Below, in pieces: positions 30,924 to 58,327 of a stretch of 64,000 nt of DNA; position 1 is the stretch's first letter, and every line of letters begins with the position of its first letter. The position numbers were made by a program, and so were the translations under genes. Location: NCBI RefSeq assembly GCF_003918875.1, contig NW_025765669.1, positions 3,410,001 through 3,474,000 of the forward strand, read 5' to 3'. This DNA is from Haliotis rubra (lineage: Eukaryota). The notes below the pieces were generated by a model that ran no database searches, had not been told where the DNA came from, and was given only the letters and a program-made list of their open reading frames with translations.

Positions 30924-33900
30924 ATGACGGATCAAGGTTCAGGGTCCACCGCGCCCGATATGAACAGTGACGCCAAACCCAGGTATTTTTATCATAGACA
31001 GTACCCGTTTTTACCCGTTAAATGAGTAGAATGTCATATTTAAGTTCTTATATTGGGAACTCACAGATCAGTCATGCATGCAGTAATATGTTAGGACCCG
31101 TGAAGATCCGGGTTAGAATCTTCAGTAGCCCATACGTGTCGTAAGAGGCGACTCACGGGATTGGGTGGTCAGGCTCGCTGACTTGGTTGACACATGTCAT
31201 CGTACGAACGACGCTGATGTTTTGATCACTGGATTGTCTGTTCCAGACACTATTAAAAAGTATTATTTACAGACCGCCGCCATGATATAGATGGAATATT
31301 GCTGAGTGCGGCGTTAAACAACAAACCAAACGAAATCAGTTACATGATAGACTCCAATTGTAAGCACTGCAGATCAGCAATTTGTGCAGAACGCGATCTA
31401 TATTAGGAAAGTCTGGCAATTTTGTAATCTTTCAAACCAAGACAAAATAGATTTAATACACGAATGGTACAACAAACGCTAGCATCACCATATAAGTAAC
31501 TTTTACTGTGAATGTTAATAAAATTGCACCCATGTATTTTTGTATCATTTGAAAGGCTGACAAATGTTGTCTTCAAACAAACGACGAGAAACCGACCTGT
31601 TTTCCGTAGTTTGATGGAAGTGTACCATGAAATGTATTTATCATATATTCAAGCGAGAATAATGGGGAAACGTATCGTTTTCAATGTAAATTCACATGTA
31701 TTTTTGTATTTCACGAAACACCGAGAATGTATGAATAATGTTTGTAGTTTTTTAGTGCCTTTGAATAGCACTGGACCATCAGGGTTATCGCAAGTAGACA
31801 ATAGTGACAAAACAAATAACAGTTCGTTGTAACAAATGTTACCATAATGGCATTTTGTTCCTTATTTGGAATTCGGGTCCCAATGTTATGATAGTTTTCA
31901 TTCGTCATATAATTTGATAATACCGATCCCGAATATTTCCTCACAAATATTTCCTATGTCCTCGGGGAAGGTTCTATATTGTGCAAATTTCAGATCCAGG
32001 ATTGAGGAAAGAGATTTTTTAACTTATGAAGGGTCACCTGTGGCTGAGGGTTGCCTCCCTTAGCTACAAGGATCTGCCGGTGGTGGTTCGAATCCATGAT
32101 CAGCATCTGTTTTGATCGTTTACTAGTCAGCGCCTGAGAGTTGAAGGTGCAGCGTTCAACAAGAAACACAATGGTGCAATTCCAGTATCAGATGTCAGGG
32201 TTCCAACCCCAGATTCAAACAATTGATCCTTATTTTAATATCTCAGAAGCAATGGCTTGTGGGTTTTACTAAAGTTGTAACGACTGACTGAGTTTGGTTT
32301 TACGCCGCTTTTAGCAATATTCCAGCAACATCACGGCGGGGGGGACACCAGAAATGGGCTTCACACATTGTACCCATGTGGGGATTCGAACCGGGTCTTC
32401 GGCGTGACGAGCCAACGATTTAACCATTAGGCTACCCCACCGCCACCTAAAGTTGTAACGACTCAGATCTGTAGAACTGATATATATATGAACTAATGAA
32501 CACATTCACTCACCCACACACGGTGACACCTTAACAAGTACTAACCTGTGCACAATGTAAATACACAGTGCCGTATTTCCAGGCCCTTCCGGTCCAAGTA
32601 CCAGAATCTGATTGACATGGGATATAGTTTAACAGTCAACGAGGACGAATCTCTTGCTGTGGTGGAGGCCCCTGGACCTTCGTTTGAGTCATTTGATGTC
32701 TATGGTAAGATTAAAGGATGTTTGGTTTGTTTGACAATTAGTGGTGGTCCGATTAATTGAAATAATCGAAGATTGGTCGTAGTGACTAAACGACCAAGCA
32801 ATCGATCACAATTTCTCATAATCGAACACAACCAATTCTTGAACACTGGTTTTCATTAACAATATCTTTCACATGGTTGGTTTTGTCTGTTACATTTCGT
32901 AAGCACTACAAGCTCGTTTCAAGTCACGATTGAATTTATCTTAAAGATTCCAAGAAATTTATGTTCCTAACATACTAGTCATCCTTTAAAGATGTGAAAT
33001 TTTGCCAAAAAACCCCAAAAGAACTACTTGTTTTTTACCTTATTTTGTGTGTATTAACAAATTTCATAAATGATGCTAACCAATTATTTTCGATGATTGA
33101 TCGGTAGTAATGAACCAATCATCAATTATGAGATTTTAACCAATTCCCAACACTATTGACAATTCAGAACACCTTGTATAACTGCAAACAGTCGGAATGT
33201 AGTGGAAGGTGTAGAGGAAATGGTACTGCTTGTTTAGAGAATATTTCTATCATGTTCTTAAATCTTTGGCAAAATATGTTTTTCTAGTATGTTTATACAA
33301 GTAATTCACAAAATACTTGATACTGATTATTATTTGCGAATGTAATAAATGTGCATGCCTGATAGTATCTTAATATGTCTTTTCGGATAAAATTAAATGT
33401 GTTTCCCCTTTCCGGTCATAGTGTAGAGATTATGTTTATAAATTATATGAAATATTATAGGTGTCCCCTCTTCCAAATATTACTAGTAGCTGCGTACTCG
33501 GTCGAGTTTATAGTGGCAGGTCGCTAAGGTACCAGACCGCAGTTCAAAGTGATTACTCATGTTTAACGCCGCATTCAGCAATATTCCTATTATGAAAGAG
33601 TGAGGGAGTGAGTTTAGTTTTACGCCGCACTCAGCAATAGTCCACTTATATAGCGGCGGTCTGTTAATAATCGAGTCTGGACCAGACAATCCAGTGATCA
33701 ATAGCATGAGCATCGATCTGCGCAATTGGGAACCGATGACATGTGTCAACCAGGCCAGCGAGCCTGACCACCCGATCCCGTTAGTCGCCTCTTACGACAA
33801 GCATGGTTTACTGAAGATTCATTCTTACCTGGCCCTTTACGGATCTTCCTGTTATGAGACCGCGTTCTGTAAATAATCATGATCATAAGCATCGATCTGC

Positions 33901-35428
33901 TCAACTGGGATATAATAACATACATCAAATAAGTCAGCGACAGTTTCTCAGATTCTAAGCTGCATCTTCACGGTCCCTTAAGGCTTAATGGCGAGCGCAA
34001 CCAGGGTAACAAGTACCATATTTAAGTCTTTTCGTATGACGCGATCGCTGGGGATCGAACTACAGACTTTCCGCTCAGTGGGTACCACCACATAGGCACA
34101 GAGCGGGTTGTCCAATGTGGGAATATTGGGATAGAATAAATTTATTTTATCATGTGTCGTCGAACCTAGACGGTATCAATCGTTATTCATCCTTCAAGAT
34201 ACAGTCAAACACCGTCTGGTGGACGTTGAAGGGACCCATGTAATACTTTGAATTATCCAAGATTCGGCACAACCGCAAAATGTGGACTTAATTAGGAATA
34301 CGCCGGAACCAAGCTTTTACTTCGAAGCAACCTCACGTTCGACTCATCAAAGTTAAACGGTGTTTAACTGTTCTTACCTCCTCCCTGACTTAAGGTGTTG
34401 GGGTAGCCTAGTGGCTGAAGCGTTCACTCGTAACGAAGGTCCGGGTTCGATTCCCCATATGGGTACAATGTTTGAAGCCCATTTGTGATGTCCCCTGACG
34501 TGATGTTGCTGGAATATTGCTAAAAGCGGCGTAAAACCATACTCACTCACTCCTCCCTAACTTGATTACTTGCAGGCCGCTGTGATATTACAGAAATGTT
34601 GCAGCTCGGTAAATAATTTTCATTCACTGACTTATTCACTAAGGAAGTGTAATTGACAATGCAAGTATTCTATTTCGTCTTTCAGGGAACTGTAAGATCT
34701 GGAGCATCATGAGACTCATGGGTGCCTGTAGGTATTTTGCCTATCATTATCCCCTCGATAAGACAGGACACTCATTCATGGACTACGGCCAAATGACAGA
34801 TGGTATGTTTACATTCATGGCGTCCTCCCAGTTTGAAATTGAAAAGTCCATGTATGACCGTCATGTGTCAAAGTGGCCGGTGAAGGTCAAAGTACAGCTC
34901 GGATACATCGGGAAGTCTTCCACCAACTCAGTCAGCAGTTTAATTGTGCCATCAACAGGCGAGACATTGGTAAGAAATGTCAACCAGATCGTTGCCATTG
35001 ACAAAGAAACGCGGAAACCGACGCCATTCCCGTCATGGTGGAAGGAGAAACACGGCGAGAAGGCTGTCAGGAAGGAACCACTGATTGTCCAGAAGCTTTC
35101 CAAACCTGACAACGCCCACACCTACACCTTGCGTGTGTCGTGGAGCGAAACAGACATGTACAATCACGTCAACTGGGCGTCTTATGTGGTGTTCTCCATC
35201 GATGCCCTCCACCACGGGATCAAAGAGGGAGTGTTGAGAGGCATGAACAAGGAGGTGGTCAAGAATGGAATACAGAGGATGCAGATGGCTTACTTTGGTG
35301 AATGTGTGGAAGGGGATCAGTTGACTGTTTACTTCTGGGAGGTGGAGGACCAGCCTAGGACTGTGTATTTTGCCATAGAAAGAGATGGAACATCCGTCTT
35401 TCAAAACACATTAACATACCACCAGTAG
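30924..35428 (+). CDS. TE-1: double hotdog-fold, acyl-ACP-thioesterase-like protein
   Basis: Exons 30924-30982 (MTDQGSGSTAPDMNSDAKP, phase 2), 32583-32704 (..MGYSL..PGPSFESFDVY, phase 1) and 34686-35428 (743 nt). Motifs LGYIGKSS, VAIDKETRKPTPFP, SETDMYNHVNWASY and YFGECVEGD. TATAAA at 30800. Confidence 0.85.
31096..31330 (+). mobile_element. Retroposon family B (intronic)
   Basis: Full-length diverged copy. Confidence 0.85.
32286..32446 (-). mobile_element. SINE family A with TSD (intronic)
   Basis: CTAAAGTTGTAACGACT on both sides. Confidence 0.9.
32739..33155. mobile_element. hAT-type MITE in TE-1 intron 2
   Basis: TAGTG..CACTA termini; perfect 8-bp TSD TTGACAAT. Confidence 0.8.
33598..33845 (-). 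mobile_element. Retroposon family B (intronic)
   Basis: Full-length copy. Confidence 0.85.
34394..34552 (+). mobile_element. SINE family A (intronic)
   Basis: Diverged full-length copy. Confidence 0.85.
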
Positions 35429-35687
35429 GAACAATATTTGTTAATTTATCACCGTCTTTAGAAGTAGATGCTTCTCGTCATGATGATCACCGGTTACCCA
35501 GAACATACATATCTGTCTCCAGAGTAATTTTGCCATAGAAAGAGATGGAACATCCGTCTTTCAAAACACATTAACATACCACCAGTAGGAACAATATTTG
35601 TTAATTTATCACCGTCTTTAGAAGTAGATGCTTCTCGTCATGATGATCACCGGTTACCCAGAACATACTTTTCTGTCTTAAGAGTAA
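35368..35687 (+). repeat. 160-bp tandem duplication spanning the TE-1 stop codon and 3' UTR
   Basis: TGCCATAGAAAGAGATGG.. starts at both 35371 and 35531. Confidence 0.9.
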
Positions 35688-37466
35688 TATGCATTTGATG
35701 AATGAAAGATATTTTACTGTAGTATTATGAGATTCGCCCTACATGTGTCTTAATTTGTCAGCTTCTTACCAGTGCTGGTGGATTCACCAAAGCTTTACCG
35801 CTTTGTCTAAAACCAACATCACTTCCTTGTTTCGTTCGATGTTAAACTGTGACGCTGTAGTAGAACTTGACTACTGTTCGAAGCGGCGCTAAAAGGTACA
35901 GATGCTAAATCTCTGGCTTATATACCAAATTGAATGAACATGAACTCAAAATTACTCCTTCAACTTCGCAAAAAGCATTTGCCTCTCTCTTGTCAACATT
36001 CGTATGACCTGACTTATCCTGTAATTTTTGACAGGGCACGTCAACAGCCGTTTTGAAAGGCAGTCGTTTAATCGTATGCTATTTATTTTGTTATGTACCT
36101 AGGACCCTACCAAGAAGAAGGGTCCCTTGTTAAGAATGTAAATATGTAGTCATATTACAGCTTACTGTATAAAACACCGACATTGTAAAGTGTTTACTTC
36201 GTTGAATTCCGGAATTGTTACGAGTATATCTGCTTGAACTTCATATTTTCAGTTGTCAAGCTCTCAAGCTTCATTTTGCTCGTTCCATTGCTAAAAGGGC
36301 AACGAAAATATGCCGCATGTCACAAGGAACGTTTGCAATGTATACCAATACATTTGGTTTTTATTTTGTATGTGTAAGATTTTGCTTATTTCAAGGGGAT
36401 ATCAGGCACAGTGACTGATTGGGTATGATCTCAAACGGCACAGGGCGTTATCAATCACAGGGCTGCGTGGTACAGATTCGAATTTTGACACGCTACCGTG
36501 ATTATTTGCTTCCAAAAACCACAAGATTGGGTTAGGACTGGCTAATAAAAGAGTGGAAAGGAAAGGACAGGACGCCGTGATCTAAACCAAGTAATTATTT
36601 GCGTATCTGCTTCCAAAAAGCACAGTACTAGGTCACTGTGTACACAGCTGGCTGATAAGAGTGAACAGGAGTCGTGTTGCACTATTGCGCTGAATGACGT
36701 GTCACTGATTTGGTCTCGTCTATATATTTTTGTATATGTCACTGATTAAATAAACATACTGCAACGTTATCTTTGTTTTTGTTTGTTTGGGGCTTTTTTG
36801 TATAATTCTATTTATATTGTTGATTCATATGTAAGATGTGACTTCATATTATGGTTGCGTTGATGGAACTATAAACGTAAAAGGCAATGTGCACACTTTG
36901 GATACGAGGGTTCATGCTGTGTATACTTTGGGTCTTTTACGTTTATAGTGAGTGAGTATGGTTTTACGCCACTTTTAGCAATATTCAAGCAATATCCGTG
37001 AGGGGAACACCAGAAATGAGCTTTACACATGTACCCATGTGGGAAATCGGACTCGGATCCTCTGTGTGAGGATTGAACGCTTTAACCGCTGGAGCTACCT
37101 CCATAGTATAACAAATCAGAAACGTGTATGATAATCAAGGTGAGATGAGGGATAGTGTAAGACGACAATACACCATTTTTTTATGTAAAATTGAGGAATT
37201 TAAAATAGGATTTGTAATTTCAAATTGATATTTAAGCAGTGTTTGTTTTGAAGATGTTAGAGATTTTTTTAATAGAAACACATGCAGAACATATCAGTGA
37301 TTCGGTGAGCATCGTTTTACGCTGCGTTTTGCAACATTCCAGCAACATGACGGCGGGGGCACTAGAACTGGACTTAACACAATGTAGCCATGTAGGGAAT
37401 CGATGAGCGAACGCTTTAACTACTAGGCTACCCCCACCGTCTTAAAGTTCTTAGTTCCTAAGAAAG

Positions 37467-37818
37467 GTGAGGTGAGGTGAAATTGGGTTTAACGTCATGC
37501 TTGAGAATATTTCGCTCATATGACGACGTGCATGCGTGTGCATGTGCGGCTGCTTGTACTAGCCCAGACTTAAGCTGGTTTTATGGTGCTAGCCCACTGA
37601 GATACCATGCCGCAGTGAAGCATGAATACCCCTCTCAGACACATTGTACTGACTCCGAGCCGACCAGTCCTTGTTGTACCCATTAATGCCGAGCGCCAGG
37701 CAGGGACCAACAAGTACCATATTTTAACGTCTTTTTGGTGTGACGCGGGCGTTGATCGAACCAGCGACCTTCCGCTCTCCGGGCGGACGCTCTAACCACT
37801 ACACCATGGAGGCTGTCC
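37467..37818 (-). mobile_element. SINE family C with TSD
   Basis: 11-bp TSD TCCTAAGAAAG at 37456-37466 and 37819-37829. Confidence 0.9.
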
Positions 37819-38597
37819 TCCTAAGAAAGACACAATTGGCGCCATGAATTTGTACAACACTTACACATAAGGCTGGGTGGTCGCCGTCGAGGATGAAATC
37901 ATTGTATCGCCAAATGGTGACCATTCCACAAGCCATTGCATTCTACTGTAACAGTTCACTGCATCAATAGCATTCAGTCGGTGTTCGCCTAATATTTTAT
38001 TAAATGAAAACGCCTATTATGCTCCGATACGTTTCATATTGGGGATTGCAATATCCTGAAAGTTAATTGGTAAACATTTATTTTGAACAATGACAGTGGT
38101 AGCACCTGTTTGGGACGTTAATGTGTCCCGTTCTCAAGCCGCCAACTGGGCCATCAACACAATCCAGCAGATACCGCGGTTCCCCGGAATATTATTCCAT
38201 CTTTGGCATGGTATGTTTTTCTGGCAAAATAATACGATCTTGGAATTACCTTCAACCTATATATTCAACCCTTTGATTGGTACGGTAAGGACAGTTGGTT
38301 GACAATGCCTTGGCGGTCCCAACGGAAACCTTCTAGTTGTAGTTTAACAATGGGGTAAGTAGGCTCCACGGTGTGATGTCCGTTTTCACTTTAGATGGTG
38401 TAGCTGATGAAACTAAGACATTGTTACCATGTATTGTGTAATTGTTTAATGTCACACTGATTACCTTCACAATAACAGAGTTGTCATCAATGGTTTTTGG
38501 GGGAGTTGTATCAAAAAGGACTTGCAAAGCCCCCATTTAAACATTGGTCGTTATCGGTGTGAAGTACATGTGACGAAGTGATCAGTTGACGACCGGC

Positions 38598-41500
38598 ATG
38601 GAAGAAGGAAACAGCGCGGAAGAAAGGAATAATGCGGAAGCCAGGTAAAAGCAAAAAGGGCTCTCGGACAATTGTCTGTTTACTTTGGGAGAGTTTATAG
38701 AGTGATGTCAGGCAGTGTTCGAAATATATCTTACTCTACAGTAACAAATTATTAGCATTGTTAATCTATAGGATGTTTGGCACTTACCTCACCTCATCTA
38801 CACACACGATTTTCATCACATTCCACGCACAACACTGTAAAGGATATTTTAGGTGTCAGAGGCCCAGATAAGCCGCGTATCCGGGTAAAATACGCATGGA
38901 AAATTTCCAATTACGCATTGAAAAATAATTGTTGCGTACCAATTACGCATTTAAAATGTTACATACGCAAAAAGTTTAAAACAAATGCGTACGGAATATA
39001 TTTATAAAAATCGCTTGCGTAATGAAAAAGACATCGATTGCTATCAAGTTGTACTGATAGTATAGGACTAGTGTTGTACTGTCAGTATAGGATGAGTGAT
39101 TTTTTTATGAAATCATTTCCATTATATTTATGTTGGTTTTGATTAGATATGACATAAGGCAGAACATACCTGCTTAGTAAACTTACTCAATGACATAATA
39201 CTTAGGTGAGTAAAATGACTGAAATACGCACATATTTGAAAGCTGTGGGTAACGGAAAATGAAATACCCACTCAATATTCATAATACCCACTCCAAAAAA
39301 ATACAGTGGGTTCAGTACCCACATGAGTTAAATCTTATCTGGAGCTCTGCGGTGTTTTAACAGCACGCTCATGTTCTCGAAGTTTGTGACTTGTAAGTCA
39401 CAATCGAAACACTTTCACTGGGAATTTCTGAGGGTGGGGCTGGTTTTACCTTTTTTAATTTCAATATCCCCTGATTTCAAGCAAAAGGATACGAAAACGG
39501 AAGCCTATTGTTGTTTCGACGGATATGGAAGAAGGAAACAGCGTGGAAGAAACGAACAATGTGGAAACCAGGTAAAAGCAAAAATGGCTCTCGGAGAATT
39601 GTCTGTTTACTTTGGGAGAGTTTATAGAGTGATGGTAGGCAGTGTTCGAAATATAACTTACTCTACAGTAACAAATTATTACTATTATCAATAAATAGGA
39701 TGTTTGGCACTCACCTCACTCGAATATCGAACACATTCCAGCACCGTTCCTTCTCCTTGTTCGTGGGTGTCAGCCACAAAGATAAACTTCTAAGACCTTC
39801 ACCACTTCCGGCTTCCCTCCTTTCGCGTCGTGATTTAACTGCAATATTGTTTAAAGCGGTGTTAATCCAATCTGCCTCACTACCTCATTAAATCCAGAAC
39901 TATAGACCCAATTACTGATCTAGGTTTATTGCCACGTGTGTCTGAACTGAGAATTTATCTGTGTGTAAAAATTTAAGGAAACCTTCCTCCCAAATTAACT
40001 ACCCCTGTACCAATGATCAAGGTACATGTACACATCAGAGTGTCAGACAAGACGCCTATGCATTTGATTTCATTCCCTGATACCATTACATTTCATTATA
40101 CCTCGAATAAACGTTTTGTTTTACGCACAATTTCGGTTACTGATGGTGTAACTTTAAGTGAATGGGCGACCTTTTTGTTTTGTTCTAAAGGCGATAGCTC
40201 TCCTTTGGAAATGTTGTAAGCGACGGTCCTTGATTTTTGTACACACACACGATTTTCATCACATTCCACGCACAACACTGTAAATGATATTTGAGGTGTT
40301 TTAACAGCACGCTCATGTACTCGAAGTTTGTGACTTGTAAGTACAATCGAAACACTTTCAAAATATTCACTGGGAATTTCTGAGGGTGGGGCTTGTTTTA
40401 CCTTTTTTAATTTCAATATCCCCTGATTTCAAGCAAACGGATACGAAAACGGAAGCCTATTGTTGTCTCGACCGACATGGAAGAAGGGAACAGCGTGGAA
40501 GAAAGGAACCATGTGGAAGCCAGGTAAAAGCAAAATGGTTCTTGAGAATTGTCTGTTTACTTTGGGAGAGTTTATAGAGTGATGGTAGGCAGTGTTCGAA
40601 TATAACTTACTCTACAGTAACAAATTATTACTATTATCAATAAATAGGATGTTTGGCACTCACCTCACTCGAATATCGAACACATTCCAGCACCGTTCCT
40701 TCTCCTTGTTCGTGGGTGTCAGCCACAAAGATAAACTTCTAAGACCTTCACCACTTCCGGCTTCCCTCCTTTCGCGTCGTGATTTAACTGCAATATTGTT
40801 TAAAGCGGTGTTAATCCAATCTGCCTCACTACCTCATTAAATCCAGAACTATAGACCCAATTACTGATCTAGGTTTATTGCCACGTGTGTCTGAACTGAG
40901 AATTTATCTGTGTGTAAAAATTTAAGGAAACCTTCCTCCCAAATTAACTACCCCTGTACCAATGATCAAGGTACACATCAGAGTGTCAGACAAGACGCCT
41001 ATGCATTTGATTTCATTCCCTGATACCATTACATTTCATTATACCTCGAATAAACGTTTTGTTTTACGCACAATTTCGGTTACTGATGGTGTAACTTTAA
41101 GTGAATGGGCGACCTTTTTGTTTTGTTCTAAAGGCGATAGCTCTCCTTTGGAAATGTTGTAAGCGACGGTCCTTGATTTTTGTACACACACACGATTTTC
41201 ATCACATTCCACGCACAACACTGTAAATGATATTTGAGGTGTTTTAACAGCACGCTCATGTACTCGAAGTTTGTGACTTGTAAGTACAATCGAAACACTT
41301 TCAAAATATTCACTGGGAATTTCTGAGGGTGGGGCTTGTTTTACCTTTTTTAATTTCAATATCCCCTGATTTCAAGCAAACGGATACGAAAACGGAAGCC
41401 TATTGTTGTCTCGACCGACATGGAAGAAGGGAAAAGCGTGGACGAAAGGAACCACGTTGAAGCCAGGTAAAAGCAAAAATGGTTCTTTGAGAATTGTCTG

Positions 41501-42026
41501 TTTACTTTGGGAGAGTTTATAGAGTGATGGCAGACAGTGTTCAGAACATAACTTACTCTACAGTAACAAATTATTACCATTGTTGTTGTTATTTTACACA
41601 TTTTTAAATTTTAATATCCCTGATTTCAAGCAAAAGGATATGAAAAGGAGAGCCGATTGCTTTTTCGTTTGGAGCATATTGTTTCCAGCGAAATTTGTCG
41701 TTGCTTTGATTGTTGTTTTCAAGTGGCCTCAAATACATTGTCAATATTTCAAATTTCCTGTTTGATTAACAAACTCATTTATGCTTCAAACGTAGAAGAA
41801 ACATGGGCTTCCGTAAAAGGAGGCTGGTCACCATAGTGCGCGTGATGTAATATTTCTACATTCTTTTCAAATGCAGGCTCTTTGCCCCTTTCCGTCACCT
41901 TGAGAAAATAGGATACAGGTTAAGACTCTTGGAGAACGAGTCACTTGCTGTTGTACACGTCCCCGGTCTTTCTGACGACGCCTTTGATGTCGACGGTAAT
42001 ACAAGAATTGTATGGTGGTGCGATTT

Positions 42027-42061
<35 letters not shown>

Positions 42062-45000
42062 ATGTGAATGTTTCTGATTGCGAAAAAATCCACACTCTAA
42101 CTGATGTTGAAAGTTATATTATAACCCCAGTGAATGGATCGATGTTGTCAATTTTCTATTTTCTTCACCTAGAGGAGTATACAACCCAGGTTACCTGTAG
42201 TTGAACTAATAACGCTGTTATTGGTCCATATATACTCAATACGTTCACTGACATACTATCTATGCGGATATTTGAAAAGTATCTGAAAATGTATGGGGAA
42301 TAGGCAGGGAGGAGTATGAGTGAGTGAGTTTAGTTTACGCCGCACTCAGCAATATTCCAGCTATATGACGGCGGTCTGTTAATAATCGAGTCTGGACCAG
42401 GCAATCCAGTGATCAACAGCATGAGCATCGATCTGCACAATTGGGAACCGATGAAATGTGTCAACCAAGTCAGCGAGCATGACCACCTGATCCCATTAGT
42501 CGCCTCTTACGACAAGCATAGTCGCCTTTGTGGCAAGCATGGGTTGCTGAAGACCTATCTTCACGGGTGGAAGAGTACGAAAAAATATACATGGTGTTCA
42601 GGTGCAACTGGCTTTGTCATGAAATCAAGGAGAGAGAGTTGAAAGGAATCGGACGGAAGTGAAAACCAGCTCTGATACATGAAAATGAAGCGGTCATATA
42701 CCATCATGTACCTCAGCTGGGATTCGAACATGGGCGATCTTATCTTACTCCTAATCACACGACCTTACGATAGTTGTGCCAAGTATTTGAACAGAAAGAC
42801 ATCTATGTATATCTAGTAAACAATGTTTCAGATATTCTCCTTAAACACAACTAAAGTACCCACTTCCACCCAGTTATACCCAGAAACTGAAAGTCACGGG
42901 AATAAGTGTATGTTTATCCCTAGTTCGATACAAACGGATTGGTGATATAAGTACTGATGATATCCCGAGGACCAAAGTGGGGAAGTTATTGAGTTCGAGT
43001 TTCGAGTTTGGTTTATACGACATTATTCTTTCCACTTCAGGGAACTGCCACGTGTGGAGCATTGTAAAGATAATAGGTGCAGCTGTTCATTTCTACGACA
43101 TTATTCTTTCCACTTCAGGGAACTGTCACGTGTGGAGCATTGTAAAGATAATAGGTGCAGCTGTACATTTCTACGACATTATTCTTTCCACTTCAGGGAA
43201 TTGCCACGTGTAGAATATTGTAAAGATAATAGATGCAGCTGTACATTTCTACGACATTATTCTTTCCACTTCAGGGAACTGCCACGTGCGGAGTATTGTT
43301 AAGATGATAGATGCAGCTGTACATTTCTACGACATTATTCTTTCCACTTCAAGGAACTGCCACGTGTGGAGTATTGTGAAGATGATAGATGCAGCTGTAC
43401 ATTTCTACGACATTATTCTTTCCACTTCAGGGAACTGCCACGTGTGGAGTATTGTAAAGATGATAGATGCAGCTGTACATTTCTACGACATTATTCTTTC
43501 CACTTCAGGGAACTGCCACGTGTGGAGTATTGTAAAGATGATAGGTGCAGCTGTACATTTCTACGACATTATTCTTTCCACTTCAGGGAACTGCCACGTG
43601 TGGAGTATTGTAAAGATGATAGGTGCAGCTGTACATTTCTACGACATTATTCTTTCCACTTCAGGGAACTGCCACGTGTGGAGCATTGTAAAGATAATAG
43701 GTGCAGCTGTACATTTCTACGACATTATTCTTTCCACTTCAGGGAATTGCCACGTGTAGAATATTGTAAAGATAATAGATGCAGCTGTACATTTCTACGA
43801 CATTATTCTTTCCACTTCAGGGAACTGCCACGTGTAGAATATTGTAAAGATAATAGATGCAGCTGTACATTTCTACGACATTATTCTTTCCACTTCAAGG
43901 AACTGCCACGTGTGGAGTATTGTGAAGATGATAGATGCAGCTGTACATTTCTACAACATTATTCTTTCCACTTCAGGGAATTGCCACGTGTGGAGTATTG
44001 TAAAGATAATAGGTGCAGCTGTACATTTCTACGACATTATTCTTTCCACTTCAGGGAACTGCCACGTGTGGAGTATTGTAAAGATGATAGGTGCAGCTGT
44101 ACATTTCTACGACATTATTCTTTCCACTTCAGGGAACTGCCACGTGTGGAGTATTGTAAAGATGATAGGTGCAGCTGTACATTTCTACGACATTATTCTT
44201 TCCACTTCAGGGAACTGCTACGTGTGGAGTATTGTAAAGATGATAGGTGCAGCTGTACATTTCTACGACATTATTCTTTCCACTTCAGGGAACTGCCACG
44301 TGTGGAGTATTGTAAAGATGATAGGTGCAGCTGTACATTTCTACGACATTATTCTTTCCACTTCAGGGAACTGCCACGTGTGGAGTATTGTAAAGATGAT
44401 AGGTGCAGCTGTACATTTCTACGACATTATTCTTTCCACTTCAGGAACTGCCACGTGTGTGGAGTATTGTAAAGATGATAGGTGCAGCTGTACATTTCTA
44501 CGACATTATTCTTTCCACTTCAGGGAACTGCCACGTGTGGAGTATTGTAAAGATGATAGGTGCAGCTGTACATTTCTACGACATTATTCTTTCCACTTCA
44601 GGGAACTGCTACGTGTGGAGTATTGTAAAGATGATAGGTGCAGCTGTACATTTCTACGACATTATTCTTTCCACTTCAGGGAACTGCCACGTGTGGAGTA
44701 TTGTAAAGATGATAGGTGCAGCTGTACATTTCTACGACATTATTCTTTCCACTTCAGGGAACTGCCACGTGTGGAGTATTGTAAAGATGATAGGGAGGGC
44801 TGTCGATTTTGCACACTGTTATCCTCTGGACAGTTCAGAACGCTTCTTCCTGGACTATGGGATACTTTTCGATCGATTGTTCACCTTCATGGCTTCTTCG
44901 TCCTTTGAGTTTAACAAGTGTTTGTATGAACCTCTTGTGTCAAAATGGCCGCTCAAGGTCAATGTGCAGCTCGGATACATCGGGAAGTCTTCCACCAATT

Positions 45001-45500
45001 TTGTCAATAATGTTGTTGAACCATCATCGGGGGAGATACTGGTGAGAAATATCAACCAGCTTGTTGCCATTGACAAGGAAACGCGGAAACCGACGCCATT
45101 CCCGTCATGGTGGAAGGAGAAACACGGGGAGAAGGCTGTCAGGAAGGAACCACTGATTGTCCAGAAGCTTTCCAAACCTGACAACGCCCACACCTACACC
45201 TTACGTGCGTCGTGGAGCGAAACAGACCTGTACAATCACGTCAACTGGACGTCTTATGTGGTGTACTCCATCGATGCCCTCCGCCACGGGATCAAGGAGG
45301 GAGTGTTGAGAGGCATGAACAAGGAGGTGGTCAAGAATGGAATACAGAGGATGCAGATGGCTTACTTTGGTGAATGTGTAGAAGGGGACCAGTTGACTGT
45401 TTACTTCTGGGAGGTGAAGGACCAGCCTAGGACTGTGTATTTTGACATAGAAAGAGATGGGACATCCGTCTTTCAAAACACATTAACATACCACCAGTAG
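38598..45500 (+). CDS. TE-2: thioesterase-like paralog with repeated N-terminal cassette exons and an acceptor array (possibly partly pseudogenised)
   Basis: Exon 1 is 38598-38644 (MEEGNSAEERNNAEA, phase 2). 90-nt phase 2-2 exons at 39482-39571, 40434-40523 and 41377-41466. Then exon 41877-41995 and last exon 44758-45500 (743 nt, open). Confidence 0.7.
38857..39349. mobile_element. MITE (CAGAG..CTCTG termini) in TE-2 intron 1
   Basis: TIR CAGAGGCCCAGATAAG/CTTATCTGGAGCTCTG. The empty site GAGGTGTTTTAACAGCAC is seen in the paralogous units at ~40293 and ~41236. Confidence 0.75.
39350..41580 (+). repeat. ~945-bp tandem repeat (~2.4 units), each unit carrying one 90-nt cassette exon
   Basis: Near-identical blocks offset by 943-952 bp (e.g. 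identical ORFs at 40096 and 41039). Homologous units at ~50140-51200 and ~51565-51950. Confidence 0.92.
42027..42061. repeat. (CAT)n microsatellite; others at 6159-6187 (GAT)n, 23628-23704 (CA)n and 58964-58997 (CAT)n
   Basis: Direct inspection. Confidence 0.9.
42317..42568 (-). mobile_element. Retroposon family B in TE-2 intron
   Basis: Full-length copy, absent from the homologous TE-3 intron. Confidence 0.87.
43014..44795 (+). repeat. 78-bp tandem array (22 full units plus the terminal junction) made from the intron/last-exon junction of TE-2
   Basis: Unit TACGACATTATTCTTTCCACTTCAG|GGAACTGCCACGTGTGGAGTATTGTAAAGATGATAGGTGCAGCTGTACATTTC. Acceptor positions end at 43040 and then every 78 nt to 44444, then 44523, 44601, 44679 and 44757. 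Single-copy homolog at 52643-52720. Confidence 0.97.
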
Positions 45501-49777: not shown

Positions 49778-52700
49778 ATGGAAGAAAGGAACAGCGTGGA
49801 AGCCAGGTAAGAGCAAAAATGGCTCCCGGAGAATTTATTTTGTACTTTGGTAGACTTTATAGAGTGATGACAGGCAATGTTCGAAATATAACTTACTCTA
49901 ATTATTACAAATTATTACAATTTGTTTTCAATCAATAGGATGTTTGGCACTCGCCTCATCTCACCTCACCCCACCCCCACCTCACCTAAGCTTAACTCAG
50001 TCTGGCTGTGGTCTGTCGCCTTTGGACAACATGTTTGCAGATTGTAATCTAATCATTAGGGGCCAACTATTTGATATTTGACTTTAGGACGTCATGAAAA
50101 AGGTCTCTGACTCCTTTCACAGAAATAATTGCGTGTAATAAAATAGAATATTGAACACATTCCAGCACCGTTCCTTCTCCGTCTTCACCACTTCAGGCTT
50201 CCCTCTTTTCAAGTCGTGATTTAACTGCAATATTGCTGAAAGCGGCGTTAATCCAATATGCCTCACTCCCTCATTAAATCCAGAACTATACAGGGTCTGT
50301 GCTTACCGGTGTCGACCCAATTACTACTCTGGGTCTATTGCCACGTGAAATAGAACGGAGAATTTATGTGTGTGTATAATTTTAGAAAACCGTCCTCCCA
50401 AATTACCTGACTGACTGAGTATGGTTTTACGCCGTTTTAGCAATATTCCAGCAATATCACGGCGGGGACACCAGAAATGGGCTTCACAAATTGTACCCAT
50501 GTGGGGAATCGAACCGGGGTCTTCGGCGTGACGAGCAAACGTTTTAACCACTAGGCTACCCGACCGCCCCCCAAATTAACTACCCCTGTACCCATAATCA
50601 AGGTAAACATCAGAGTGTCAGACAAGATGCCCATGCATCTGATTTCATTCTCTGAAACCATTGCATTTCATTATGACCTCGAATAAACGTTTTGTTTTAG
50701 GCACAAATTTGGGTCACCGATGGTGTAACTTTAAGTGAATTGTTAACCATTTTGTAATATAAACTGGCGTGCAAAAGAAAATACATACACGATTTTCATC
50801 ACATTCCACGCACAAAACTGTAAAAGATATTTGAGGTGTTTTAGCAGCACGTACATGTACTCGATGTTTGTGACTTGTAATTCACAATCGAAACATTTTT
50901 CAAAATATTCACTTGGAATTTCTTGGGCTGGGGTTTGTTTATCATTTCTAAATTTTAATGACCCCTGATTTCAAGCAGAAGGATACGAAAACGGAAGCCT
51001 ATTGTTGTCTCGACCGGCATGGAAGAAGGAAACAGCGTAGAAGAAAGGAACTATGTGGATGCCAGGTAAAAGCAAAAATGGCTCTCGGAGAACTGTCTGT
51101 TTACTTTGGGAGAGTTTATAGAGTGATGGCAGGTAGTGTTCGAAACATAACTTACTCTACAGTAACAAATTATTAATATTATTAATCAATAGGATGTTTA
51201 GCACATGTAAATTATTTAATTATGTATTGATGTTTGCTAAAGTTATAGTGTATCGCTGCAAAGTCACTGGAAGTGATTGTAATTTTGACACTTTCATAAA
51301 AGATCTAAAATTACATTAAAATATGGAAACATATCGGAAAAAATATATGTGAAAAAGTAAAATCTGTATGTGCATAGTCTTTAACACTTATGACAACTGT
51401 ATTACTAATTATGACCTATCATATTTAACCCCAACACCCTGGTATGTCCATCCACGTGACACTGTACAGGGGATTAAAATCGTGGAATTTTATTTGCTAA
51501 TAAATGATGCTGAAAAAAGAAGAAAAGGATATTTGGCACTCACCTCACCTCACTCACCTGACTTAGACACACGATTTTCATCACATTCCACGCACAACAC
51601 TGTAAAGGTTATTTTAGGTGTTTTAGAAGCAAGCACATGTACTCGATGTTTGTGACTTGTAAGTCACAATCGAAACATTTTTCAAAATATTCACTTGGAA
51701 TTTCTGGGGATGGGGCTTGTTTTACATTTGTAACTTTCAATGTCCCCTGATTTCAAGCAAAAGGATACGAAAACGGAAGCCTATTGTTGTCTCGACCGAC
51801 ATGGAAGAAGGGAAAAGCGTGGAAGAAAGGAACAATGTTGCATGCCAGGTAAAAGCAAAAATGGCGCTCGGAGAATTGTCTGTTTACTTTGGGAGAGTTT
51901 ATAGAGTGATGGCAGGCAGTGTTTCGAAACATAACTTATTATACAGTAATAGTAGTGGCCTCAAATGTATTGTCATTATTCCAAATTTCTTGCTTGAAAT
52001 TTCGAGTTTTGAAAGACATGAATTATCGTATTTCAAGGAAGTAGTCGAAACCATGACAAAATCATCGAAATTTTAAGTTTTTAAAACATCCTCGAAATTT
52101 CGAAGCAACGAAACTTTCGATTAAAAGCGTCATTTATGCTTCAAACGTAGAAGAAACATGGGCTTCCGTGAGAGGATGTTGGTCATCATAGTGCACGTGA
52201 TGTAATATTTCTCCACTCTTTTCAGATGCAGGCTCTTTGCTCCATTCCGTCACCTTGAGAAAATGGGATACAGGTTAAGACTCTTGGAGAACGAGTCACT
52301 TGCTGTTGTACACGTCCCCGGTCTTTCTGACGACGCCTTTGATGTCGACGGTAATACATAAATTGTATGGTGGTGCGATTTATCACCACCACCATCATCA
52401 ACATCATCATCATCATATGTGAATGTTTCTGATTGCGCCAAATCCACACCCTAATTGATGTTGAAAGTTTCCCCAGTGAATGAATGGATCGATATTGTCA
52501 GTTTTCTATTTTCTTCACCTTGGGGAGTATACGACTAATATCGTTGTTATTGGTCCATATATACTCAATAATTTCATTGACATACCATCTATGCGGATAT
52601 TTGAAAGGAAAATGTGTGGGTAATAGGCAGGGAGAGTTGTATGACGACATGATTCTTTCCACTTCAGGGAACTGCCACGTGTGGAGTATAGCGAAGATAA

Positions 52701-53410
52701 TAAGTGCAGCTGTTCATTTTGCACACAATTATCCCTTGGACAGTTCGGAACGCTTCTTCCTGGACTTTGGTATACTTAGCGATGGATTGCTCACCTTCAT
52801 GGCTTCTTCGTCCTTCGAATTTGACAAGTCTTTGTATGACCCTCTTGTGTCAAAATGGCCGCTCAAGATCAATGTACAGCTCGGATACATCGGGAAGTCT
52901 TCGACCAATTTTGTCAGTAATATTGTTGAACCATCATCTGGGAAAATACTGGTGAGAAATACCATCCAACTGGTTGCCATTGACAAAGAAACGCGGAAAC
53001 CGACGCCATTCCCACCATGGTGGAAGGAGAAACACGGCGAGAAGGCTGTCAGGAAGGAACCACTGATTGTCCAGAAGCTCTCCAAACCTGACAACGCCCA
53101 CACGTACACCTTGCGTGTGTCGTGGAGCGAAACAGACATGTACAAGCATGTCAACTGGGCGTCGTATGTGGTGTACTCCATCAATGCTCTCCACCACGGG
53201 ATCAAGGAGGGAGTGTTGAGAGGCGTGAGCAAGGAGGTGGTCAGGAATGGAGTGCAAAAGATGCAGATGGCTTACTTTGGTGAATGCGTGGAAGGGGACC
53301 AGCTGACTGTTTACTTCTGGGAGGTGGAGGACCAGCCTAGGACTGTGTATTTTGACATAGAAAAGGATGGAACGTCTGTCTTTCAAAACACATTAACATA
53401 TCATCAGTAG
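49778..53410 (+). CDS. TE-3: thioesterase-like paralog with cassette exon(s)
   Basis: Exon 1 is 49778-49806 (MEERNSVEA, phase 2). A 90-nt cassette at 50976-51065 and a 91-nt frameshifted cassette at 51758-51848. Then exon 52226-52350 and last exon 52668-53410 (743 nt). Confidence 0.8.
50408..50569 (-). mobile_element. SINE family A inserted after the cluster duplication
   Basis: Flanked by CCCAAATTA on both sides. The empty site CCTCCCAAATTAACTACCCC is present in the paralogous units at ~39985 and ~40935. Confidence 0.9.
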
Positions 53411-55118: not shown

Positions 55119-55367
55119 ACCCGTGAAGATCTGGGTTAGAACTGATCTTCAGCAACCCATGCTTGTCGTAAGAGGCGACTAACGAGATCGGGTGGTCAGG
55201 CTCGCTGACATTGTTTACTCATGTCATCGGTACCCAATTACGTAGAACGATACTCATGATGTTGATCACTGGATTGTCAGGTCCAGATTCGATTATTTAC
55301 AGACCGCCACCATAAAGTTGGAAGATTGCTGAGTGCGGCGTAAAACTAAACTCACTCACTCACTCAC
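55119..55367 (+). mobile_element. Retroposon family B with TSD
   Basis: Full-length copy; GATGGAACA is repeated on both flanks. Confidence 0.88.
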
Positions 55368-55779
55368 AGATGGAACACGTGCCGTTAAACATACAAAACA
55401 AAACACAAAGCTCGAGTCAAGTATCTTCTGTAATAACCTAAATATAAAACGTGGAGAGATTCCAAAACGCTTTACCTTTGTGGTATCCATGGATTTGGTG
55501 TGTCTGGATTTGCGGAGCTGGCAATGACAATGTTTGTTACTTTAATTTGTAAACTCATATTCTTCAACTCAATGGCTCATCATTGTCGACCCGATGTTTT
55601 TTAATTCACAGTGTACATTTATCACACCTGGGCCCAGTTGTACAAAGCGACCTTAATGCTACAACTACCATGTCTATGTTAGAATTACGATCGTCATAGC
55701 GCTGCTAAGATCGCGTTGTGCAAGTGGGCGCTGGTCCTTTGAGATTTTACATTTTGAGATGAAAACACCACTGAAACTG

Positions 55780-58327
55780 TCAGTCGTGATAAACAAACGT
55801 GCTCTGGAATATAGACTGGCCCAATTTCTGAATATCGAAATGTACAGTTTTGTCATCCTGGTCCGATGCCCACACCCAAATAGTCAGCTCATCGTTCTCT
55901 AAACTCTCCCCGATGTAAGTGTTCCTCATGGACTTGATGCCACGTTTGACCACCCCCTTGGTAACAGCTCCCATGCAACCTTTCTCTATGGCATAATGCA
56001 ATGCGTTGACGCAGTAGTACGCATAGTATGCGTAGTTGGTGTGATTATGATTGTCAGTGTGCACCCATGCGACCTTGACATTGTACAGCACAGCGCCACC
56101 TGGCCGCTCTAATTTTGGAACTATCATTGGATTTTTCAAGATGGCGGATCCGCCATGTTTCTCCCTCCACCAATCCGGAAGAGGTTTAGGTCGTCTGCTT
56201 GTTTTATCCATTCCAACGAGATGATTGATGTTTTTGAGGATGGTCTGACCGGTTGATGGAACAATAATGGAACCAACGGAACTGAAGGATGACTTGCCAA
56301 CATACCCGAGTTGATACAAAACATCTAAGGGGTTCTTAGGTACGGATATGTCATAAAGTTCCCTTTCTGTAACGAACTCGGATGAAGCTGCGAACGCCAG
56401 TCTGTCCGACGTGAGCTCAGCGTAGTCAAATAGTGTCCTTCCAGACACATCCAGGGGACAGTGGGAAGCAAATATTCTAGCTATGGTTACAAATCGCATC
56501 AAGCTCGGCATTGTGGGATTACCTGAAATGGAGAATTCTTGTCGATATGTGATACTCGTTGAAACAATGATCAAAAGAAACATTTATACGACCTGAAACA
56601 GAAGAGTAAGACTAATTCGGTAACCATACAGTTTGAGTTTAACGCCGGTAACAGGTTCTGACAGTATTACCGTTATTTCTCTTGTCAGCATACGAAAGTC
56701 GTAGCTAAGATCATGCACTTTGTGCTAGTACACCAAGGTCTTAGCAATTTTGGTGAAATCAATCAGGGCGAAAAGTGTGTGATTCTTTATTCCTGCCTCA
56801 TGCACTTACGCACGCAAGAACGCACGCCCACTATTATTTCTATTTTTGATATAGACTTAATTACTGGATACGTCAGTTCGTTAAAAAATTAAAATTATCA
56901 TTAAAACTAGCATGCGACACAAACACTGTATTTACCGTCTCTGTCCAAGGATTCAAGTGAAAAGCCAGGAGTATGTACGATAGACTGCGTCTCTGTCGTG
57001 TCCACCGTCTGACTGTATCCCATGTTCTTCAGGCTGGCCATGAAGCGTCTGTAATGAGTGAGTGAGTTGTGTTTTACGCCGCAGTTGGTTAAACACGGTT
57101 GTGTTGCACTTAATGTTGTCTAGAAACAAAATGCTTAGTACCTTCACATTCTTTCTTAATGCATTATGTTCGGGTGTGTCGAACATCGGATAATAGAGGT
57201 ACTTACGTAGTTCCCTTTACTGACTGAGTGAGTTGGTTTTACGCCGCTTTTAGCAATATTCCAGCAATATCACGGCGGGGACACCAGAAATGGGCTTCAC
57301 TCATTGTACCCATGTGGGGATTCGAACCCGGGTCTTCGGCGTGACGAGCCAACGCTTAAACCACTAGACTACCCCACCGCCCCTAGTTCGCTTTAAATAA
57401 CTTCGACACAACTGAGCAAAGGCCTGGCAAACAGGTCGGTGATGGCATGAACCGTGACTCATGATGGGGTAGGATAACGTACTACAGACAAGGGCATAAT
57501 TATAAGAATCACATGCATCAACCAATAGGTAAGTGATCATGACTGTTTACAAGAATTCCCGTAATGGTTGATGAACGTTATACAACAGACGACTGTTATA
57601 TTGAGTGCGTTTGGTCTAACGGCGCTTTGAATGTTCCCGGTATATAACATCTTCTGGGGTGAGTTTAGTTTCACGCCGCTTTTAGCAATATTCTAGCAAT
57701 ACCACGGCGGACGGACACCAGAAATGGGCTTCACACATTATACCCATGTTGGGAATCGTACCCGGGTCTTCGGCGTGACGAGCGAACGCCTTAACCACTG
57801 GGCTACCCCATCGCCCATTTCATATTTGAGAAGGATCACTGCATATTATATAATCAAATATGGATACATGAAAATACCGTGACTAGAATTAGTACAGAAA
57901 ATCACATTAAAGAAATCATTCATGTATAATATTTGTATCTTTGAACTGAAAAAGCATTACAAAAAATCTGTCAACCCTACGATTTGTCCCACCCGACACT
58001 AAGGAATAACATTTTATGGAGCTTCAATGTGTGACCCAGTAATAAGGGGGAGTAACTCTAATCTCAACTGATTTCAACCTTTGACCAGAAGCAAAACGAC
58101 ACCGAATTACCTCAGTTGTTCACTGTTAACAAACCACCAAACCCGTATTCTTTTGTTGAACACACAACTAACCGGGAAAGAAGTCCTGAAATGGCATCAT
58201 CACTTTGTTCTGGTGACCCGTCAGTACTGAACTGTCTCAGATACGAGCAAGACAGAACACCACGTCTGAAAAGCGTTGGCAGTCCAAGATGCTGGCAGAG
58301 TCCGGTTGCGGTGTAAATGGTGAACAT
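55780..58327 (-). CDS. TE-4: divergent thioesterase-like paralog with a mitochondrial-presequence-like N-terminus
   Basis: Exons 58173-58327 (MFTIYTATGLCQHLGLPTLFRRGVLSCSYLRQFSTDGS.., phase 2), 56936-57048 (..NMGYSQ..PGFSLESLDRD, phase 1) and 55780-56522 (743 nt). Motifs LGYVGKSS, DKTSRRPKPLP, HTDNHNHTNYAYY and YIGESLEND. Confidence 0.85.
57219..57383 (-). mobile_element. SINE family A (intronic)
   Basis: Full-length match. Confidence 0.9.
57658..57816 (-). mobile_element. SINE family A (intronic)
   Basis: Full-length match. Confidence 0.88.

What the first reader, a model, noticed from the sequence alone, without database searches (positions are those of the whole stretch)
30924..58327. 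Thioesterase paralog cluster with interchangeable N-terminal targeting modules on a shared phase-2 junction
Seen: the four paralogs share one core (a phase 2-1 exon plus a last coding exon of exactly 743 nt), but their upstream phase-2 exons are unrelated. TE-1 has a 19-aa neutral peptide. TE-2 and TE-3 have an acidic MEEGNS/MEERNS-type peptide plus KRIRKRK-containing cassettes. TE-4 has a 51-aa peptide that is Arg/Leu/Ser/Thr-rich and acid-free up to ..LRQF-STD, resembling a mitochondrial presequence with an R-2/R-3 cleavage motif. Inference: one enzyme scaffold is sent to mitochondria, cytosol and nucleus by exon swapping. A nuclear acyl-thioesterase could influence nuclear acyl-CoA pools.
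Basis: partly seen in the sequence, partly recalled or inferred. Interest (0 to 1): 0.8.

Follow-up and report, generated by a model that had tools for sequence, protein, structure and literature searches.

The report
Abalone thioesterase paralogs with different leaders
Four neighbouring abalone genes encode the same uncharacterised fatty-acyl thioesterase with different short N-terminal leaders: one looks like an inherited mitochondrial import signal, two carry a young, conserved nuclear-signal-like mini-exon, but no protein location has been tested and this is an ordinary way for duplicated genes to diverge.

Summary
The window is Haliotis rubra. The four paralogs are RefSeq models LOC124272481, LOC124272484, LOC124272485 and LOC124272430. 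Each has a phase 0-2 leader exon, a phase 2-1 exon of 113-125 nt and a 743-nt last exon.

The protein is a double-hotdog thioesterase whose closest solved folds are FatA/FatB and bacterial acyl-ACP thioesterases. The Asp, His and Glu that align with the FatB and bacterial catalytic residues are kept in all four.

- **Shared junction.** It is an ancestral molluscan intron, also found in Mercenaria, Lottia and Aplysia. It is not a site of exon swapping.
- **TE-4 leader.** The presequence-like leader is the ancestral state. It has no acidic residue before position 36, and an R-x-F/W/L-S/T motif is kept in all ten leader-bearing Haliotis TE-4-type proteins.
- **TE-1 to TE-3.** They form one derived clade that replaced this leader.
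- **KRIRKRK cassettes.** They are partial copies of exon 1 joined to former intron sequence. They also occur in H. asinina. The basic half shows pN/pS of about 0.1-0.2, so it is probably translated and constrained.

Localisation is untested, and I could obtain no RNA evidence. This looks like relocalisation of paralogs after duplication, a known process. Other first-reader notes of this scan cover the cassettes, the splice-site array and TE-2's origin on this same window.

The parts
30924..30982 (+). TE-1 (LOC124272481) leader exon. 59 nt, 19 aa, mildly acidic, no targeting features.
   Evidence: Exact mapping of P0019. The peptide is conserved in H. rufescens, H. cracherodii and H. asinina. 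Residues 1-20 are disordered in the AF2 model.
32583..32704 (+). TE-1 phase 2-1 exon, 122 nt. Encodes the first helix and strands of the N-terminal hotdog, including the internal MGY methionine.
34686..35428 (+). TE-1 last coding exon, 743 nt.
38598..38644 (+). TE-2 (LOC124272484) leader exon. 47 nt, acidic MEEGNS... peptide.
39482..39571 (+). TE-2 cassette copy 1. Intact 90-nt phase 2-2 exon with AG and GT sites; not used in the RefSeq model.
40434..40523 (+). TE-2 cassette copy 2, 90 nt, encoding KRIRKRKPIVVSTD followed by MEEGNS...
41377..41466 (+). TE-2 cassette copy 3, 90 nt.
41877..41995 (+). TE-2 phase 2-1 exon, 119 nt. The internal Met of the other paralogs is Ile here.
43012..44794 (+). 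Array of 22.8 copies of a 78-nt unit, made of the end of the intron plus the start of the TE-2 last exon. It repeats the 3' splice site and makes the acceptor ambiguous.
44758..45500 (+). TE-2 last coding exon, 743 nt.
49778..49806 (+). TE-3 (LOC124272485) leader exon. 29 nt, peptide MEERNSVEA.
50976..51065 (+). TE-3 cassette, 90 nt. Present in predicted isoform X1 and skipped in X2.
51758..51848 (+). TE-3 second cassette copy. It is 91 nt because of a 1-nt insertion, so it breaks the frame if included. Not in the models.
52226..52350 (+). TE-3 phase 2-1 exon, 125 nt.
52668..53410 (+). TE-3 last coding exon, 743 nt.
58173..58327 (-). TE-4 (LOC124272430) leader exon. 155 nt, 51 aa, presequence-like, with the motif R-Q-F-S at residues 31-34.
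56936..57048 (-). TE-4 phase 2-1 exon, 113 nt.
55780..56522 (-). TE-4 last coding exon, 743 nt.

Best explanation
This is a tandem family of an uncharacterised animal double-hotdog thioesterase. Its fold is that of FatA/FatB and bacterial acyl-ACP thioesterases.

Shown:
- The ancestral molluscan gene has three coding exons. Exon 1 encodes only a disordered leader and ends in phase 2.
- In the outgroups and in the TE-4 clade that leader looks like a mitochondrial presequence.
- TE-1 to TE-3 form one derived clade with other, unrelated short leaders.
- In the TE-2/3 lineage, a partial tandem duplication of exon 1 joined to former intron sequence created a symmetric 90-nt exon. Its new 5' half encodes KRIRKRKPIVVST. 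The exon was amplified and has persisted since before the H. rubra / H. asinina split.
- Gene conversion keeps the C-terminal half of TE-1 to TE-3 nearly identical, while the leaders and the N-terminal hotdog stay distinct.

Inferred:
- TE-4 is imported into mitochondria and cleaved near R-Q-F|S.
- TE-1 and the cassette-less TE-3 isoform are cytosolic by default.
- Cassette-bearing TE-2 and TE-3 isoforms gain a polybasic signal, most simply a classical NLS, in a dose set by cassette number and skipping.
For: - **Identity and models.** and exact mapping.
- **Fold and catalytic residues.** AF2 mean pLDDT is 93.8, with residues 1-20 disordered. Foldseek ranks acyl-ACP thioesterases 2ESS, 5X04 and FatA first, E about 1e-16, TM 0.62-0.77. 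A family profile hits 5X04 at 3.8e-10. D217, H221, N223 and E266 are kept in all four paralogs.
- **Ancestral architecture.**
- **Presequence-like leaders.** Lottia, Aplysia, Lymnaea and Mercenaria X1 have them. R-x-[FWL]-[ST] is kept in all ten leader-bearing Haliotis TE-4-type proteins.
- **Phylogeny.** TE-1 plus TE-2/3 is one clade nested among presequence-bearing lineages, with support 100/99. The N-half-only tree gives 98.
- **Cassette origin.**
- **Cassettes in H. asinina.** They are 87 and 90 nt, and the internal ATG has become ATC.
- **Constraint.** pN/pS is 0.09-0.18 for the basic half against 0.76 for the acidic half. Interspecies identity is 88% for the basic half against 75% and 64% for the flanking introns.
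- **Gene conversion.**
Against: - There is no localisation data and no dedicated predictor (TargetP, MitoFates, cNLS Mapper) was available.
- TE-4's own leader is only weakly basic: net +2 in the first 30 residues, helical moment 0.50.
- R-x-x-S is also a basophilic kinase consensus.
- No RNA reads could be obtained, so cassette inclusion rests on RefSeq predictions plus conservation.
- The pN/pS values come from six short, non-independent copies.
- A purine-rich exon half could instead be conserved as a splicing enhancer.
- H. cracherodii lacks the cassette, so it is dispensable in some abalone.
Confidence: 0.6

Rival explanations
1. The leaders are poorly constrained first exons that drifted apart, and the cassettes are neutral exonised junk. 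All four enzymes work in the same compartment.
For: The leaders are short, disordered and fast-evolving. The acidic half of the cassette has pN/pS of about 0.8-1.2. One cassette copy is frame-broken. H. cracherodii has no cassette.
Against: The R-x-F-S motif and the scarcity of acidic residues (absent before position 12-47 in most leaders) persist in otherwise divergent TE-4-type leaders and in distant molluscs. The basic half of the cassette is more conserved than its introns and has pN/pS of 0.09-0.18. Its length changes only in multiples of three.
Confidence: 0.15
2. The cassettes are alternative first exons. Transcription starts at each copy and translation starts at the internal ATG (MEEGNS...), so KRIRKRK is 5' UTR and is never made.
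For: The 3' half of each cassette is a copy of exon 1 including its ATG. From that ATG the frame exits in phase 2, as exon 1 does.
Against: Both H. asinina cassettes have ATC in place of the ATG, yet keep the frame and the KRIRKRK motif. Similarity to exon 1 starts only about 8 nt before the ATG, so the promoter and 5' UTR were not copied. Every copy has a conserved AG acceptor. Substitutions in the basic half are mostly synonymous.
Confidence: 0.1
3. The cassette is translated and selected, but its polybasic stretch next to an acidic stretch does something other than nuclear import. Examples are nucleolar retention, binding to acidic membranes or RNA, or regulating the enzyme.
For: Polybasic clusters are not specific to importin. 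The copies are repeated and each sits next to an acidic tract. The family's substrates are lipidic.
Against: KRIR and RKRK both fit the K-K/R-X-K/R consensus of classical NLS (established knowledge). No transmembrane or lipid-anchor feature was seen.
Confidence: 0.2
4. One reading: leader exons are interchangeable modules exchanged between paralogs at a shared phase-2 junction (exon shuffling).
For: All leaders end in phase 2, and the cassettes are phase 2-2, so any combination stays in frame.
Against: The junction is an inherited intron present across Mollusca. Each leader type needs only one change on the tree and is orthologous across three species. No leader was found attached to another core, and no relic presequence exon was found upstream of TE-1 to TE-3. 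Recombination signals lie in the 3' half, not in the leaders.
Confidence: 0.05

Closest known systems
Plant FatA/FatB and bacterial acyl-ACP thioesterases (TE14; e.g. 5X04, 2ESS, 2OWN)
   Same: Double-hotdog fold with TM 0.62-0.77. Profile match at E 3.8e-10. The Asp, His and Asn of the D-x-x-x-H-V/T-N motif and the downstream Glu are conserved. Plant members also carry an N-terminal organelle-targeting peptide (established knowledge).
   Different: Only 13-18% identity. Pfam Acyl-ACP_TE is not hit and Acyl-ACP_TE_C is below its cutoff. The position of FatB Asn283 is Tyr or His. The family is animal (molluscs, Capitella, Branchiostoma) and its substrate is unknown.
Mammalian type-I ACOT gene cluster, e.g. 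cytosolic ACOT1 versus mitochondrial ACOT2 (from my own knowledge, not tested here)
   Same: Tandem thioesterase paralogs with near-identical catalytic parts that are sent to different compartments by the presence or absence of an N-terminal leader.
   Different: Those enzymes are alpha/beta hydrolases, not hotdog proteins. No nuclear-signal-like cassette is known there.
Protein subcellular relocalisation after gene duplication (PMC2790464, PMC2817416)
   Same: Duplicates diverge mainly in N-terminal targeting information, including loss of mitochondrial presequences.
   Different: Here localisation is only predicted. A new, amplified mini-exon is added, and gene conversion homogenises the 3' half.
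Dual targeting by alternative start sites, e.g. PRDX5 (PMC3759418)
   Same: Mercenaria and Liolophura each have a long and a short predicted isoform from one gene of this family; the Mercenaria long form has a presequence-like leader and its short form starts at the internal Met.
   Different: In Haliotis the two forms are fixed in separate paralogs. The internal Met is lost in TE-2.

Membership tests
TE14 acyl-ACP thioesterases (FatA/FatB/bacterial) | Tandem double-hotdog fold | tested here: met
   AF2 mean pLDDT 93.8. The top 44 Foldseek hits are all acyl-ACP thioesterases, E 1e-14 to 1e-17.
TE14 acyl-ACP thioesterases (FatA/FatB/bacterial) | Pfam Acyl-ACP_TE (PF01643) or Acyl-ACP_TE_C (PF20791) at the gathering score | tested here: not met
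   PF20791 scores 15.4-19.4 bits against a cutoff of 21. PF01643 is not reported.
TE14 acyl-ACP thioesterases (FatA/FatB/bacterial) | Catalytic D-x-N-x-H motif plus Glu in the C-terminal hotdog | tested here: inconclusive
   Asp217, His221 and Glu266 are kept in 65-69 of 70 family members and in all four paralogs. The Asn position is Tyr in TE-1 to TE-3 and His in TE-4.
TE14 acyl-ACP thioesterases (FatA/FatB/bacterial) | Hydrolysis of acyl-ACP | not testable with these tools
   Needs an enzyme assay.
Pfam 4HBT_2 hotdog thioesterase superfamily (PF13279) | Score above the gathering cutoff of 25.5 bits | tested here: met
   25.9-38 bits for the four paralogs.
MPP-cleaved mitochondrial presequence (TE-4 leader) | N-terminal stretch free of acidic residues, net positive, rich in Arg, Leu, Ser and Thr | tested here: met
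   The first acidic residue is at position 36. Three Arg lie in residues 1-31. Heuristic count only.
MPP-cleaved mitochondrial presequence (TE-4 leader) | R-2 or R-3 cleavage motif | tested here: met
   R-Q-F-S at residues 31-34. R-x-[FWL]-[ST] is kept in all ten leader-bearing TE-4-type Haliotis proteins.
MPP-cleaved mitochondrial presequence (TE-4 leader) | Amphipathic helix; import and cleavage | tested here: inconclusive
   The best 11-residue helical moment is 0.50, no higher than in the non-presequence leaders. Import is not testable here.
Classical monopartite NLS (cassette) | K-K/R-X-K/R core | tested here: met
   KRIRKRK in four copies and RRIRKRK in one, across the five H. rubra copies, and KRIRKRK in both H. 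asinina copies.
Classical monopartite NLS (cassette) | Importin-dependent nuclear accumulation | not testable with these tools
   Needs a localisation experiment.
Exon shuffling / interchangeable modules | The same module found on different cores, or exchange between paralogs at the junction | tested here: not met
   Each leader type is monophyletic and orthologous. The intron is ancestral. No relic leader was found.
Cassette (alternatively spliced symmetric) exon | Length a multiple of three, AG/GT sites, and inclusion and skipping isoforms | tested here: inconclusive
   Lengths of 90 or 87 nt and conserved splice sites. Isoforms X1 and X2 exist only as RefSeq predictions. No reads were available.

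The most novel reading that the evidence does not exclude
A functional nuclear-import signal arose de novo in abalone. A tandem duplication joined intron sequence to a partial copy of exon 1. The resulting 90-nt symmetric exon was then amplified and is alternatively spliced. It sends a FatA/FatB-type acyl thioesterase, otherwise mitochondrial or cytosolic, into the nucleus in a graded way. Meanwhile gene conversion keeps the C-terminal halves of the three TE-1 to TE-3 paralogs the same.
Probability: 0.25. Interest if true: 0.6.

Novelty: new member of a known kind. Interest (0 to 1): 0.4.

Why it matters
The locus is a compact natural case in which one enzyme family appears to have been redistributed among compartments by changes confined to a leader exon. 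The origin of one putative signal can be traced to a datable duplication junction. It also draws attention to an unnamed animal family with the fold of plant and bacterial acyl-ACP thioesterases, whose ancestral form looks mitochondrial. That raises a testable possibility that it acts on mitochondrial fatty-acid-synthesis intermediates. None of this overturns current ideas, because relocalisation of duplicates by gain or loss of N-terminal signals is well documented.

Tried and rejected
- **RNA evidence.** Two run searches found no run on record as RNA. Runs X6-X8 and X1, laid on 38000-43000, gave contigs that cross exon-intron borders, with enormous depth only over interspersed repeats (38835-39500 and 42175-42675). 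They are genomic DNA or repeat matches, with no exon-exon joints. Expression and splicing therefore could not be checked.
- **Search with the TE-2 leader region.** It returned only the three known RefSeq proteins, so no transcript-derived protein confirms the cassettes.
- **Relic presequence exon upstream of TE-1 to TE-3.** Permissive tblastn found nothing credible.
- **Basic half of the cassette as copied 5' UTR of exon 1.** Rejected: similarity upstream of about -8 is no better than in shuffled sequence.
- **Rfam scan of the window.** No hits.
- **Phage-collection search with a cassette repeat unit.** Irrelevant, and empty.
- **Literature search for animal acyl-ACP thioesterases in molluscs.** Nothing on this family.
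- **Exon shuffling.** Considered and rejected; see the rival explanations.
Full report
**What is there.** The window is from Haliotis rubra. The last exons of the four paralogs match RefSeq proteins at 100% identity: LOC124272481 (TE-1, P0019, 307 aa), LOC124272484 (TE-2, P0016, 362 aa), LOC124272485 (TE-3; isoform X1 is P0015, 328 aa; X2 is P0170, 298 aa) and LOC124272430 (TE-4, P0001, 336 aa). Every gene has a leader exon ending in phase 2, a phase 2-1 exon (122, 119, 125 and 113 nt) and a 743-nt last exon. All introns are GT-AG. The TE-1 leader is mildly acidic rather than neutral. The TE-2 and TE-3 leaders are homologous to each other. There are five cassette copies: three in TE-2, all intact, and two in TE-3, of which one is 91 nt and would break the frame.

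**What the protein is.** Pfam places the protein in 4HBT_2 just above threshold, with Acyl-ACP_TE_C just below its cutoff. An AlphaFold2 model of TE-1, built on 70 homologues, is confident: mean pLDDT is 93.8. It is a double hotdog. Residues 1-20, exactly the leader exon, are disordered.

Foldseek ranks acyl-ACP thioesterases first: Bacteroides 2ESS, Umbellularia FatB 5X04, Arabidopsis and Lemna FatA, and Lactobacillus 2OWN, with E 1e-14 to 1e-17 and TM 0.62-0.77. A profile of the family reaches 5X04 at E 3.8e-10. In that alignment FatB Asp281 and His285 correspond to Asp217 and His221, and FatB Asn283 corresponds to Tyr219. In the 2ESS alignment a Glu corresponds to Glu266. Asp217, His221, Asn223 and Glu266 are nearly invariant in the family and present in all four paralogs. 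Position 219 is Tyr in TE-1 to TE-3 and His in TE-4. The enzymes are therefore probably active thioesterases, with substrate unknown.

An exhaustive search found 636 relatives at E 0.001 or better. Those whose origin I looked up are from gastropods, bivalves, a chiton, Capitella and Branchiostoma. All are uncharacterised or automatically named.

**The shared junction is inherited, not a shuffling site.** The same 0-2 / 2-1 / 1-0 architecture, including the 743-nt exon, is found in H. asinina and H. cracherodii. Mercenaria (134, 116 and 752 nt), Lottia (167, 116 and 767 nt) and Aplysia (194 and 125 nt, with the last exon split once more) share it. The phase-2 intron therefore predates the gastropod-bivalve split.

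A maximum-likelihood tree puts TE-1 and TE-2/3 in one clade with support 100/99. That clade is nested among lineages whose exon 1 is presequence-like: Mercenaria X1, Lottia, Aplysia, Lymnaea and the Haliotis TE-4 clade. Each leader type needs only one change on the tree. The result holds when only the N-terminal half is used. No relic presequence exon lies upstream of TE-1 to TE-3.

The simplest history is an ancestral presequence-bearing gene, one replacement of the leader on the stem of TE-1/2/3, then divergence of TE-1 from TE-2/3. TE-2 and TE-3 split after the H. cracherodii lineage separated and before the rubra-asinina split.

**TE-4 leader.** No acidic residue occurs before position 36. 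Arg sits at 21, 22 and 31, and R-Q-F-S at 31-34 is followed by an acidic, Ser/Pro-rich linker. All ten leader-bearing TE-4-type Haliotis proteins examined keep R-x-[F/W/L]-[S/T] at the matching place, although the surrounding sequence diverges. This matches the R-3 / R-2 plus Icp55 pattern of MPP-cleaved presequences (established knowledge).

There are caveats. The net charge is modest and the helical moment is not distinctive. No dedicated predictor was available. R-x-x-S is also a kinase consensus.

**Cassettes.** Each 90-nt exon is phase 2-2. Its 3' half, together with the following intron, is a copy of exon 1 and its intron. The similarity starts only about 8 nt before the ATG. The acceptor and the first ~12 nt correspond to a stretch of intron 1 that H. 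cracherodii still has about 95 nt upstream of its phase 2-1 exon, without the AG. I found no source for the remaining ~25 nt. The KRIRKRK-encoding half is therefore new coding sequence made from non-coding DNA at a duplication junction.

The cassettes are not peculiar to H. rubra. The H. asinina TE-3 orthologue (P0169) has two, of 87 and 90 nt, both with KRIRKRK and both with the internal ATG changed to ATC. Its TE-2 orthologue has decayed remnants. H. cracherodii has none.

Between species the basic half is 88% identical, against 75% and 64% for the flanking introns and 79% for the acidic half. Nei-Gojobori counts over six copies give pN/pS of 0.18 for the basic half, 0.09 for KRIRKRK alone and 0.76 for the acidic half. 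The counts are small and the copies are not independent. Even so, this pattern, the in-frame length change and the loss of the ATG in H. asinina argue that the cassettes are translated as internal exons and that the basic motif is under selection. They argue against the alternative-first-exon reading.

KRIR and RKRK both fit the classical K-K/R-X-K/R consensus for a nuclear localisation signal. Whether the motif drives nuclear import or does something else is open.

RefSeq predicts TE-3 isoforms with and without the cassette. TE-2's internal Met is Ile, so TE-2 at least cannot start at the MGY position.

**Gene conversion.** Within H. rubra the TE-1 and TE-2/3 last exons are 60-70% identical over their first 200 nt and 95-97% identical over their last 440 nt. 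A tree of the C-terminal half groups TE-1 with TE-2/3 by species or lineage. For example, H. cracherodii TE-2/3 groups with H. cracherodii and H. rufescens TE-1 at 99. The N-terminal half groups by orthology. The 'shared core' is thus actively homogenised, while the leaders and the first hotdog escape. This is the only recombination seen between paralogs, and it does not involve the leaders.

**What could not be done.** No RNA run was available. The runs found were DNA or repeat matches, with no exon-exon joints. Exon usage therefore rests on RefSeq predictions and comparative evidence.

**Verdict.** The anatomy is real but already present in public gene models. The mitochondrial reading of TE-4 is well founded in silico and is the ancestral state. 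The cytosolic reading of TE-1 is a default. The nuclear reading of TE-2/3 is plausible but unproven. 'Exon swapping' is not supported. Overall this is a further example of relocalisation of duplicates through leader-exon change. Its more interesting side is a conserved, amplified mini-exon of non-coding origin, in an uncharacterised animal FatA/B-like thioesterase family. Other first-reader notes of this scan describe the cassettes, the splice-site array and a hybrid origin for TE-2 on this same window.

Noticed in passing
window 43012-44794: A 78-nt unit, made of the last ~24 nt of the intron plus the first ~54 nt of the TE-2 last exon, is repeated 22.8 times at 96% identity. It gives about 23 equivalent 3' splice sites. 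The unit is 26 codons and the frame stays open across long stretches of the array, so use of an upstream acceptor would insert 26-aa repeats into the first hotdog domain.
   Followed up: partly
window 34986-35428, 45058-45500 and 52968-53410: The 3' 440 nt of the TE-1, TE-2 and TE-3 last exons are 89-97% identical, against 60-70% for TE-1 versus TE-2/3 in the first 200 nt. Trees of the C-terminal half group by species, so gene conversion is ongoing.
   Followed up: yes
window 35367-35688: A 160-nt tandem duplication (2 copies, 97%) spans the end of the TE-1 coding sequence, its stop codon and the start of the 3' UTR. The TE-1 and TE-2 3' flanks are about 90% identical over about 560 nt.
   Followed up: no
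window 47869-48744: Decayed Tc1/mariner-type transposase remnant between TE-2 and TE-3, seen as an HTH_38 ORF and a DDE_3 ORF.
   Followed up: partly
window 38835-39500 and 42175-42675: Very high-copy interspersed repeats, with summed contig depth of 1e5-1e7 in public runs. Related copies lie in the TE-1 intron (33601-33807) and near TE-4.
   Followed up: no
window 51758-51848: The second TE-3 cassette copy has a 1-nt insertion near its 3' end (91 nt), so including it would shift the frame. It may be a decaying copy.
   Followed up: partly
L001 (H. asinina) 5180-5400 and 5940-6160: Decayed cassette remnants in intron 1 of the H. asinina TE-2 orthologue. One has lost the AG acceptor. This suggests the cassette predates the TE-2/TE-3 split and was lost from asinina TE-2.
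   Followed up: partly
window 21496-21688: A run of 193 N (assembly gap or masked). Left untouched.
   Followed up: no
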